A model generated the notes under the pieces. It did no database searches. It had not been told where the DNA came from and saw only the letters and a list, made by a program, of their open reading frames with translations. From positions 5,182,176 through 5,230,680 of the forward strand of contig NC_068988.1 in NCBI RefSeq assembly GCF_001194135.2: a DNA stretch of 48,505 nucleotides, given 5' to 3'. Position numbers and translations under genes: made by a program. Below are positions 4,466-4,629 of the stretch, in pieces (position 1 is the first letter of the stretch; each line of letters opens with the position of its first letter). This DNA is from Octopus bimaculoides. Its lineage: Eukaryota.

Positions 4466-4540
<75 letters not shown>
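4466..4540. repeat. (GT)n microsatellite abutting the ribozyme; similar arrays at ~5005-5113, ~7617-7716, ~14680-14755, ~37630-37716 and ~46338-46460
   Basis: Directly visible. Confidence 0.98.
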
Positions 4541-4542
<2 letters not shown>

Positions 4543-4629
4543 TTCCCTGAAGAGAAGATTACATTCTTAACATCGCCGATTCCTATGGATGGTATAATTT
4601 GTAATTCTTCGAAACATATGTCGGAAATA
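4540..4629 (+). ncRNA. Type I hammerhead ribozyme with intact core; predicted cleavage after C4622 (GUC)
   Basis: Helix I TATTTCC(4540-4546)/GGAAATA(4623-4629); core CTGAAGA(4547-4553); helix II GAAGATTACA(4554-4563)/TGTAATTCTTC(4600-4610) with one bulged T and a G-C closing pair; GAAA(4611-4614); palindromic helix III ACATATGT(4614-4621); C17 = 4622. AATAAA at 4626-4631. Confidence 0.85.

What the first reader, a model, noticed from the sequence alone, without database searches (positions are those of the whole stretch)
4540..4629. Intact type I hammerhead ribozyme with palindromic helix III
Every canonical core position is present: C3U4G5A6-A7-G8A9, G10.1:C11.1, G12A13A14, A15.1:U16.1 and C17 in a GUC site. 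Helix I has 7 bp and helix II about 10 bp. Helix III is only the 8-nt palindrome ACATATGT. Minimal type I hammerheads with a palindromic helix III are established for Penelope-like pseudo-LTRs and metazoan non-LTR retrozymes, where two copies pair through the palindrome and cleave as a dimer. Helix II here is unusually long, with a 36-nt cap that can form a further CATC/GATG hairpin. Nearly every other mobile sequence in the window is eroded, so an unbroken core implies recent insertion or selection (inference).
Basis: partly seen in the sequence, partly recalled or inferred. Interest (0 to 1): 0.9.

Follow-up and report, generated by a model that had tools for sequence, protein, structure and literature searches.

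The report
Solitary hammerhead ribozyme motif between microsatellites
The flagged 90 bases really do spell a complete type I hammerhead self-cleaving RNA motif, but it is a lone copy of a kind already well known from Penelope-like retrotransposons and their small derivatives in animal genomes, so it is real but ordinary.

Summary
Window 4540-4629 (+) contains every hammerhead core position, a 7-bp helix I, a 10-bp helix II with one bulged U and a 36-nt cap, and the 8-nt palindrome ACATATGT as helix III.

- **Rfam match:** Hammerhead_1 (RF00163) aligns end to end at 31.3 bits. That is just under its gathering score of 34, because of a 53-nt insertion in helix II.
- **Chance:** simulated windows gave no motif as good in 300 tries.
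- **Dimer:** two copies are predicted to form the domain-swapped double hammerhead through the palindrome. The monomer helix III is weak.
- **Context:** this is the only copy in the window. There is no tandem array and no RT or GIY-YIG reading frame nearby. The 129-bp unique segment lies exactly between (TG)n and (TA)n tracts.

This fits a 5'-truncated Penelope-like element end or a solo retrozyme monomer inserted into a microsatellite, which is a published target bias of these elements.

No homologues could be retrieved, so covariation, copy number and activity remain untested. I rate it a new member of a known kind, of low to moderate interest.

The parts
4428..4539 (+). (TG)n microsatellite that abuts the 5' end of the motif. 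Further (TA)n/(TG)n blocks lie upstream from about 4395.
   Evidence: TRF row 4428-4540, period 2, 56.5 copies; sequence.
4540..4546 (+). Helix I, 5' strand (UAUUUCC, positions 2.7-2.1).
   Evidence: Pairs with 4623-4629 through 7 Watson-Crick pairs. Pair probabilities are 0.65-0.98 in the isolated 90-mer.
4547..4553 (+). Catalytic core, first strand: C3 U4 G5 A6 A7 G8 A9.
   Evidence: Sequence CTGAAGA. It aligns to the RF00163 consensus CUGAcGA.
4554..4563 (+). Helix II, 5' strand (GAAGAUUACA), starting with G10.1.
   Evidence: Ten pairs with 4600-4610. Pair probabilities are 0.44-0.98.
4564..4599 (+). 36-nt cap of helix II. It holds a possible CAUC(4571-4574)/GAUG(4588-4591) 4-bp stem and an ATG at 4585.
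   Evidence: The MFE fold contains the 4-bp stem. Translation of the frame from the ATG.
4600..4610 (+). Helix II, 3' strand (UGUAAUUCUUC), with U4605 bulged and C11.1 at 4610.
   Evidence: Explicit pair list.
4611..4613 (+). Catalytic core, second strand: G12 A13 A14.
   Evidence: Sequence; RF00163 alignment.
4614..4621 (+). Helix III: the 8-nt palindrome ACAUAUGU (A15.1 to U16.1). As a monomer it gives only 2 bp plus an AUAU loop. In a dimer it gives an 8-bp intermolecular helix.
   Evidence: Monomer pair probability is about 0.1. The homodimer MFE of -39.4 kcal/mol contains the 8-bp intermolecular helix, against 2 x -14.6 for monomers. The RF00163 consensus has the same loop-less <<<<>>>> arrangement.
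4622..4622 (+). C17. The predicted cleavage site is 3' of this base (between 4622 and 4623).
   Evidence: GUC triplet at 4620-4622. Cleavage itself is inferred from the family and not tested.
4623..4629 (+). Helix I, 3' strand (GGAAAUA, positions 1.1-1.7).
4630..4668 (+). 39-nt unique tail between the ribozyme and the (TA)n tract. It is possibly the 3' end of the inserted element.
   Evidence: Sequence. No other copy in the window. The assignment as an element end is inference from PLE architecture (PMC8557442, PMC11167929).
4669..4708 (+). (TA)n microsatellite flanking the 3' side.
   Evidence: TRF row 4674-4707, period 2, 17 copies, 100% matches; sequence.

Best explanation
The 90 bases are a genuine type I hammerhead ribozyme sequence of the Penelope-like-element (PLE) / non-LTR retrozyme lineage. 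They survive here as a solitary 129-bp fragment (4540-4668).

The most likely history is one of two:
- a heavily 5'-truncated PLE copy that kept only the ribozyme-bearing end of the pseudo-LTR, or
- a solo retrozyme monomer.
Either would have been inserted by target-primed reverse transcription into a compound (TG)n/(TA)n microsatellite.

If the locus is transcribed, helices I and II should form locally. Helix III is too weak in a monomer (2 bp). Cleavage after C4622 would therefore need two RNA molecules to pair through ACAUAUGU and swap helix I strands, forming a double hammerhead. With no second copy in cis, this locus is probably a non-mobile relic that is inert or only weakly self-cleaving.

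Shown: the motif, its statistical significance, the dimer prediction, its solitary state and its microsatellite flanks. Inferred: PLE/retrozyme origin, the insertion mechanism, and any catalytic activity.
For: Motif and significance:
- Complete core and three helices.
- RF00163 full-length alignment at 31.3 bits, E = 1.5e-6.
- 0 of 300 simulated windows gave a motif as good.

RNA folding:
- The homodimer MFE is -39.4 kcal/mol, against 2 x -14.6 for monomers. It has the 8-bp intermolecular helix III and swapped helix I strands.
- Monomer helix III pair probability is about 0.1, while helices I and II are mostly 0.84-0.98 (range 0.44-0.98).

Solitary state:
- No second copy by blastn.
- None with a filter-free covariance model built from the motif.
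- No tandem repeat with a period above 28.

Flanks:
- The unique segment is bounded exactly by (TG)n and (TA)n.

Literature:
- PLE hammerheads in flies, rotifers, shrimps and mosquitoes have a small palindromic helix III, an enlarged helix II that is sometimes bulged, and low activity unless dimeric (PMC4209133).
- PLEs are typically 5'-truncated, carry the hammerhead in the pLTR near the unit's end, and prefer microsatellite targets such as (TA)n and (CA)n (PMC8557442).
- Reverse transcription starts a short distance downstream of the hammerhead in an Anolis PLE (PMC11167929).
- Solo retrozyme monomers are common, and retrozymes derive from PLE pLTRs (bioRxiv 10.64898/2026.07.22.740005).
Against: - No PLE reading frame (RT or GIY-YIG) was detected anywhere in the window by Pfam on all stop-to-stop frames of 45 aa or more. 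This test is insensitive: even the evident RT and endonuclease fragments gave no Pfam hit.
- No homologue of the 129-bp unit was retrieved from any collection. Family membership therefore rests on the motif alone, with no covariation and no shared element termini.
- The score is below Rfam's gathering threshold.
- Helix I (7 bp) is longer than in the published minimal PLE hammerheads, and there is no unpaired base between A9 and G10.1, which those have (PMC4209133).
- In a 221-nt transcript model, the flanking (UG)n and (UA)n pair with each other, and the hammerhead-compatible fold is 2.7 kcal/mol above the MFE.
Confidence: 0.6

Rival explanations
1. Chance motif. AT-rich, low-complexity DNA happens to spell the hammerhead core with complementary flanks, and there is no ribozyme ancestry.
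For: - The 90-mer is no more stable than shuffles (z = -0.29).
- The palindrome ACATATGT resembles microsatellite sequence and occurs 9 times in the window, against 2.1 expected.
- The hit is below the Rfam gathering score.
- No homologue was found.
- The first stage screened many features, so some selection bias applies.
Against: - Infernal E = 1.5e-6 for the 111-nt scan. Rescaled, that is about 7e-4 per window and about 6e-3 for this family in 2 Gb.
- 0 of 300 simulated windows gave an equal motif, and the strict descriptor is expected only 0.007 times per window.
- Helix I is 7 Watson-Crick pairs, helix II is 10 pairs, and G10.1:C11.1 and C15.2:G16.2 are all of the preferred types.
Confidence: 0.05
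2. A host-retained, functional ribozyme under purifying selection. For example, it could process a host transcript, with the long helix II cap acting as a regulatory or protein-binding module.
For: - The core is intact and both long helices are unbroken.
- The helix II domain is unusually large.
- Conserved intronic and UTR hammerheads exist in vertebrates (own knowledge; Rfam HH9 and HH10).
Against: - No evidence of conservation is available.
- No gene or exon was recognised around it.
- It is embedded in microsatellites.
- The weak monomer helix III is typical of repeat-borne hammerheads, not of stand-alone ones.
- Intactness of about 14 fixed bases is expected by chance in a sizeable share of moderately young copies.
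Confidence: 0.07
3. A member of an active tandem retrozyme array or full PLE whose neighbouring copies were lost by assembly collapse in this gap-ridden, repeat-rich assembly. On this reading it is not really solitary.
For: - The window has six N gaps and very many microsatellites.
- The literature notes that PLE insertions often break short-read assemblies (PMC8557442).
Against: - The nearest gaps, ending at 2305 and starting at 8437, are more than 2 kb away.
- The sequence is continuous from the (TG)n tract through the motif into the (TA)n tract.
- No partial second unit was found.
Confidence: 0.1

Closest known systems
Rfam RF00163 Hammerhead_1 (type I hammerhead ribozyme)
   Same: All core positions match. 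Helix I is open. The helix III consensus is a loop-less 8-nt palindrome (ACGcgCGU), matched here by ACAUAUGU. The alignment covers the full model, positions 1-45.
   Different: Helix II carries 53 nt where the model has about 10. The score of 31.3 bits therefore falls below the gathering score of 34, and Rfam's speed filters drop the hit in larger scans.
Hammerheads in pseudo-LTRs of Penelope-like elements (Cervera & de la Pena 2014, PMC4209133; Lunse et al. 2017, RNA Biol., from own knowledge)
   Same: - Type I motif.
- Small palindromic helix III, so dimer-dependent cleavage.
- Enlarged, sometimes bulged helix II.
- No recognisable loop-loop tertiary contacts.
- The host elements insert into microsatellites and are usually 5'-truncated (PMC8557442).
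   Different: - No RT/GIY-YIG frame and no second pLTR in the window.
- Helix I is 7 bp rather than 2-5.
- No unpaired base between A9 and G10.1.
- Helix II, at 10 bp plus a 36-nt cap, is larger than the 6-8 bp reported.
Metazoan non-LTR retrozymes (Cervera & de la Pena 2020, PMC7229834; Li et al. 2026 preprint 10.64898/2026.07.22.740005)
   Same: A type I hammerhead in a short non-coding unit. Solo monomers are described. Crustacean examples exist (Eurytemora affinis, 278 nt).
   Different: The defining tandem arrangement of two or more units, each with a hammerhead, is absent. The unique unit is 129 bp, below the reported 170-400 nt.
Double hammerheads of newt satellite 2 and avocado sunblotch viroid (Forster et al. 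1988, as cited in PMC4209133 and PMC7229834)
   Same: A weak helix III with a palindromic loop. Activity arises when two copies pair to build a long shared helix III. The same topology is predicted here.
   Different: In those cases the copies sit in multimeric transcripts, from a tandem satellite or rolling-circle RNA. Here only one copy is present at the locus.

Membership tests
Hammerhead ribozyme, type I (RF00163) | Conserved core: C3 U4 G5 A6 N7 G8 A9, G12 A13 A14, A15.1:U16.1, and H17. | tested here: met
   Read directly at 4547-4553, 4611-4614, 4621 and 4622. The RF00163 alignment matches every core column.
Hammerhead ribozyme, type I (RF00163) | Three helices around the core, with helix I open-ended. 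| tested here: met
   Helix I is 7 bp. Helix II is 10 bp with one bulge. Helix III is 2 bp as a monomer or 8 bp as a dimer.
Hammerhead ribozyme, type I (RF00163) | Score at or above Rfam's curated gathering threshold (34 bits). | tested here: not met
   31.3 bits and nothing at gathering level on the whole window. The shortfall is attributable to the 53-nt insertion in helix II.
Hammerhead ribozyme, type I (RF00163) | Covariation that supports helices I and II among homologues. | not testable with these tools
   No homologue in the window, in JGI metagenomes or among predicted proteins overlapping such repeats. No eukaryotic genome DNA collection was available.
Hammerhead ribozyme, type I (RF00163) | Mg2+-dependent self-cleavage 3' of position 17. 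| not testable with these tools
   This needs in vitro transcription of monomer and dimer constructs.
Penelope-like element pLTR hammerhead | Small palindromic helix III that allows dimeric cleavage. | tested here: met
   ACAUAUGU at 4614-4621. The cofold MFE is the double hammerhead. The feature is described in PMC4209133.
Penelope-like element pLTR hammerhead | Located in a pseudo-LTR that flanks an RT plus GIY-YIG reading frame. | tested here: not met
   Pfam found no hit on frames of 45 aa or more across most of the window (about 10.8-15.9 kb and 38.6-43.6 kb were not scanned), and there is no repeat of the unit. The test has low sensitivity for eroded frames. A 5'-truncated copy would lack the ORF anyway.
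Penelope-like element pLTR hammerhead | Insertion into microsatellite targets, 5' truncation, and no clear target-site duplication. | tested here: met
   The unit is bounded by (TG)n and (TA)n, and no target-site duplication is discernible. The bias is described in PMC8557442. This is consistent with membership but not specific to it.
Penelope-like element pLTR hammerhead | Many related copies per genome that form consensus families. | not testable with these tools
   The source genome is not identified and is not in the searchable collections.
Non-LTR retrozyme | Tandem repeat of at least two units (about 170-400 nt), each with a complete type I hammerhead. | tested here: not met
   TRF finds no period above 28 in 3000-6500. 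There is a single hammerhead in the window, and the unique unit is 129 bp.

The most novel reading that the evidence does not exclude
The motif may represent an undescribed structural subclass of type I hammerhead with a 57-nt helix II domain: 10 bp, a bulged U placed where loop 2 normally sits, and a 36-nt cap that carries an in-frame ATG. Standard Rfam annotation would miss this subclass systematically. It might be abundant in microsatellite-rich crustacean-like genomes, carried by microsatellite-targeting Penelope-like elements whose reading frame starts inside the ribozyme. The flanking (UG)n/(UA)n duplex might then act as an extended helix I.
Probability: 0.08. Interest if true: 0.5.

Novelty: new member of a known kind. 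Interest (0 to 1): 0.25.

Why it matters
Type I hammerheads with a palindromic helix III are already catalogued in thousands of copies in many animal genomes, as parts of Penelope-like elements and retrozymes. One more solitary copy changes little.

Two points are of modest practical value:
- A hammerhead with a long helix II insertion scores just under Rfam's threshold and is dropped by the speed filters. Routine annotation of such genomes will therefore under-count these ribozymes.
- The exact placement between (TG)n and (TA)n tracts is a neat single-locus illustration of the microsatellite target preference reported for Penelope-like elements.

If genome-wide copies exist, they could show whether an enlarged helix II is a family trait.

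Tried and rejected
1. Rfam at gathering threshold on the whole window gave nothing. An 801-nt scan at E <= 10 gave only microsatellite-driven miRNA look-alikes. The hammerhead hit appeared only in a 111-nt scan.
2. I looked for a second copy with a core-pattern search, blastn at word size 7, my own descriptor and a filter-free single-sequence covariance model R1. None was found.
3. I looked for PLE reading frames by packing stop-to-stop frames of 45 aa or more into pseudo-proteins for Pfam. About 10.8-15.9 kb and 38.6-43.6 kb were left unscanned. There were no hits at all, not even for the obvious RT and endonuclease fragments, so the test is weak.
4. I looked for homologues elsewhere.
   - Six-frame peptides across the ribozyme against 5.8 billion predicted proteins gave none.
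   - A JGI metagenome scan with a strict pattern gave 0 hits.
   - A relaxed pattern gave 12 loci, none with helix I pairing. They are chance or coding matches.
5. Species identification failed.
   - The RT-tail ORF has its best hit at 79% to an ENA metagenome contig, 64% to Penaeus indicus and 58% to Clytia.
   - The endonuclease ORF has a best hit of 60%.
   - Exact-product look-ups of two window ORFs were not on record.
   - About 64 kb of fetched Penaeus indicus and ENA loci share only the LINE at 64-69% identity.
   - The organism remains unknown. A decapod-like, microsatellite-rich metazoan is a guess.
6. Supplementary files that might list shrimp or crustacean hammerhead sequences are not held. 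The NAR 2020 supplement names only a copepod retrozyme.
7. A bacterial-type promoter and terminator scan is irrelevant to a eukaryote and was ignored.
8. One Rfam check on L014 used wrong-strand coordinates and is uninformative.

Full report

Yes. Reading window 4540-4629 on the + strand gives:

UAUUUCC / CUGAAGA / GAAGAUUACA - 36 nt - UGUAAUUCUUC / GAA / ACAUAUGU / C / GGAAAUA

- The predicted cleavage site lies between 4622 and 4623.
- Helix I is seven Watson-Crick pairs.
- Helix II is ten pairs with U4605 bulged.
- The 36-nt cap (4564-4599) contains CAUC (4571-4574) and GAUG (4588-4591), which pair in the minimum-energy fold.

**2. Is it more than chance?**

- Rfam found nothing at gathering thresholds on the whole window and nothing hammerhead-like in an 801-nt permissive scan.
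- A 111-nt scan returned RF00163 Hammerhead_1 at 4541-4628, covering model positions 1-45, at 31.3 bits. The gathering score is 34 and E = 1.5e-6.
- The alignment matches all core columns. The only anomaly is 53 nt where the model expects about 10 in helix II. That insertion explains both the sub-threshold score and the loss to the speed filters in larger scans.
- Rescaling the E-value by search space gives about 7e-4 for this window against all families, and about 6e-3 for this single family over a 2-Gb genome. This is arithmetic.
- My own descriptor found only this hit on either strand.
- In 150 order-1 and 150 order-3 Markov windows, a loose descriptor hit 0.05-0.15 times per window and a strict one 0.007 times. 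Nothing reached the observed helix lengths.
- The 90-mer is not unusually stable (z = -0.29). That is normal for small AU-rich ribozymes and is not evidence against it.

I conclude that the sequence descends from a real hammerhead.

**3. Anatomy and predicted behaviour**

- In the isolated 90-mer, helices I and II mostly have pair probabilities of 0.84-0.98 (lowest pairs 0.44 and 0.65). The 2-bp monomer version of helix III reaches only about 0.1.
- Two copies cofold to -39.4 kcal/mol, against 2 x -14.6 for monomers. The MFE dimer has the 8-bp intermolecular ACAUAUGU duplex and reciprocal exchange of helix I strands. That is the topology of a double hammerhead with two composite active sites.
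- The palindrome duplex alone is worth only -7.0 kcal/mol. Dimerisation in trans would therefore need high RNA concentration, while tandem copies in cis would favour it.
- There is no copy in cis. Blastn, a filter-free covariance model built from the motif and TRF all show a single unit.
- In a 221-nt transcript model, the flanking (UG)n and (UA)n pair with each other through U-A and G.U pairs (-61.5 kcal/mol, z = -4.7).
- A fold that keeps the hammerhead helices inside that long stem is 2.7 kcal/mol worse, and the hammerhead pairs drop to about 0.09 probability.
- The present genomic context therefore competes with the active fold, although it does not exclude it. Co-transcriptional folding would favour the hammerhead. 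That last point is inference.

**4. Surroundings**

- The unique segment runs from 4540 to 4668 (129 bp). It is bounded exactly by (TG)n on the left and (TA)n on the right.
- No target-site duplication can be read in such flanks.
- Most of the window's reading frames of 45 aa or more (about 10.8-15.9 kb and 38.6-43.6 kb were not scanned) gave no Pfam hit. No RT/GIY-YIG frame can therefore be tied to the motif. The test is insensitive, because it also missed the evident LINE fragments.
- The window is a eukaryotic, very microsatellite-rich sequence with six assembly gaps.
- Its LINE fragments have their best relatives in an ENA metagenome contig (79%), in Penaeus indicus (64%) and in Clytia (58%).
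- The species could not be identified.

**5. Most likely explanation**

The literature describes this class well.

- Cervera & de la Pena 2014 (PMC4209133) showed that PLE pseudo-LTRs carry type I hammerheads. They have an enlarged and sometimes bulged helix II, lack tertiary contacts and show low activity.
- In flies, rotifers, shrimps and mosquitoes these hammerheads also have a small palindromic helix III. Cleavage requires dimers.
- Craig et al. 2021 (PMC8557442) describe PLEs as usually heavily 5'-truncated. The hammerhead sits in the pLTR near the end of the unit, and there is a strong insertion bias for microsatellites such as (TA)n and (CA)n, which obscures target-site duplications.
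- For an Anolis PLE, reverse transcription starts internally a short distance downstream of the hammerhead, and the ORF begins inside stem II (PMC11167929).
- Non-LTR retrozymes are short tandem units with type I hammerheads (PMC7229834). They appear to derive from PLE pLTRs, and solo monomers are frequent (bioRxiv 10.64898/2026.07.22.740005).

A 129-bp unit that consists of a hammerhead plus 39 nt, sitting exactly at a (TG)n/(TA)n junction, is what a severely 5'-truncated PLE insertion or a solo retrozyme monomer would look like. I put about 0.9 on true hammerhead ancestry. I put about 0.6 on the full statement: a PLE/retrozyme-lineage fragment, inserted into a microsatellite, now a solitary and probably inert relic.

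**6. Rivals**

- **Chance (about 0.05).** The statistics above disfavour it.
- **A host-selected functional ribozyme (about 0.07).** Nothing supports this beyond intactness. Only about 14 bases must stay fixed, so a moderately young neutral copy has a substantial chance of staying intact. Other repeats in the window are 83-94% identical, and two retroelement frames are still open.
- **Assembly collapse of an array (about 0.1).** The nearest gaps are more than 2 kb away and the sequence is continuous through both flanks.

**7. Membership versus resemblance**

- **Hammerhead type I.** Core and helices are met. Rfam's curated threshold is narrowly not met. Covariation and cleavage could not be tested.
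- **PLE pLTR hammerhead.** The palindromic helix III and the microsatellite context are met. Linkage to a PLE ORF or pLTR was tested and not found. Genome-wide copy families could not be tested.
- **Non-LTR retrozyme.** The defining tandem arrangement was tested and is not met.

I therefore file it as working like a PLE/retrozyme dimeric hammerhead and probably derived from one. I do not file it as a demonstrated part of either element.

**8. Novelty and score**

- This is a new member of a known kind.
- The unusually long helix II domain, the in-frame ATGs at 4585 and 4618 (a 19-codon frame ending at TAA 4642-4644) and the pairing microsatellite flanks are curiosities. They could mark a distinct subfamily, with a probability of about 0.08 that this is a real and widespread structural subclass. 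Nothing here requires that.
- Interest is 0.25.

**9. What could not be done**

No eukaryotic genome DNA collection was searchable. The attempts to find relatives failed or returned chance matches:
- peptide proxy;
- two metagenome pattern scans;
- fetched shrimp and ENA loci.

The decisive step is a filter-free search of the source genome and its relatives, followed by pair counting on the alignment and a monomer-versus-dimer cleavage assay.

Noticed in passing
window 4530-4640 versus 4200-5000: Rfam's speed filters lose this hammerhead. The 31.3-bit RF00163 hit appears in a 111-nt scan but not in an 801-nt scan at E <= 10, and it is below the gathering score on the full window. Hammerheads with long helix II insertions will be under-annotated by routine pipelines.
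   Followed up: partly
window 4428-4540 and 4669-4708: The flanking (UG)n and (UA)n tracts are mutually complementary through U-A and G.U pairs. They are predicted to form a stem of about 35 bp that encloses the ribozyme (-61.5 kcal/mol, z = -4.7). The hammerhead-compatible fold is 2.7 kcal/mol less stable.
   Followed up: partly
window 4585-4644: An ATG in the helix II cap (4585) and an ATG inside the helix III palindrome (4618) are in the same frame, which stops at TAA 4642-4644 (19 codons). This recalls the Anolis Penelope-like element, whose ORF starts in stem II of its hammerhead (PMC11167929). It may equally be coincidence.
   Followed up: no
window 3063, 4061, 4089, 4393, 4614, 12436, 26774, 41134, 48015: The helix III palindrome ACATATGT occurs 9 times in the window, against 2.1 expected. 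It is the kind of sequence found at CA/TA/TG microsatellite junctions.
   Followed up: yes
window 100-220, 327-467, 32116-32230, 32293-32434, 33009-33129, 37484-37692: Copies of a short dispersed (SINE-like) repeat occur in both orientations at 83-94% identity. It was not identified.
   Followed up: no
window 20600-22001 (+): A non-LTR retrotransposon remnant. It has an RT motif region around 20988-21037 and an open 269-aa C-terminal frame at 21195-22001. Its best relatives are 79% (ENA metagenome contig L001), 64% (Penaeus indicus) and 58% (Clytia hemisphaerica).
   Followed up: partly
window 48142-48504 (+): An open 121-aa frame resembling an AP-type endonuclease (LINE 5' part) runs off the end of the window. 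Its best database relative is only 60% identical.
   Followed up: partly
window 1442-2305, 8437-8698, 14123-14377, 18633-18769, 32438-32889, 41196-41519: There are six runs of N (assembly gaps), several of them next to microsatellites. The long 'inverted repeats' reported by the repeat finder between 8375-8698, 14075-14377 and 41254-41577 are N-run and (CT)n/(AG)n artefacts.
   Followed up: partly
window 4200-4760: The sub-threshold Rfam matches to mir-297, mir-3149, mir-1277 and similar families are produced by the (TA)n/(TG)n tracts. They are not miRNA genes.
   Followed up: yes
L014 (Penaeus indicus JAGYIC010000007.1), about 14524-14569, minus strand: The loose descriptor hit a possible minimal hammerhead: GTTTA CTGATGA T GGAGGT..ACCTTT GAA ACGT C TAAAT. 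It has an unpaired base after A9 and a 4-nt palindromic helix III, as described for PLE hammerheads. It is not homologous to the window motif, and chance hits at this looseness are expected at roughly 0.1 per 50 kb. The one Rfam check I ran used wrong-strand coordinates.
   Followed up: no
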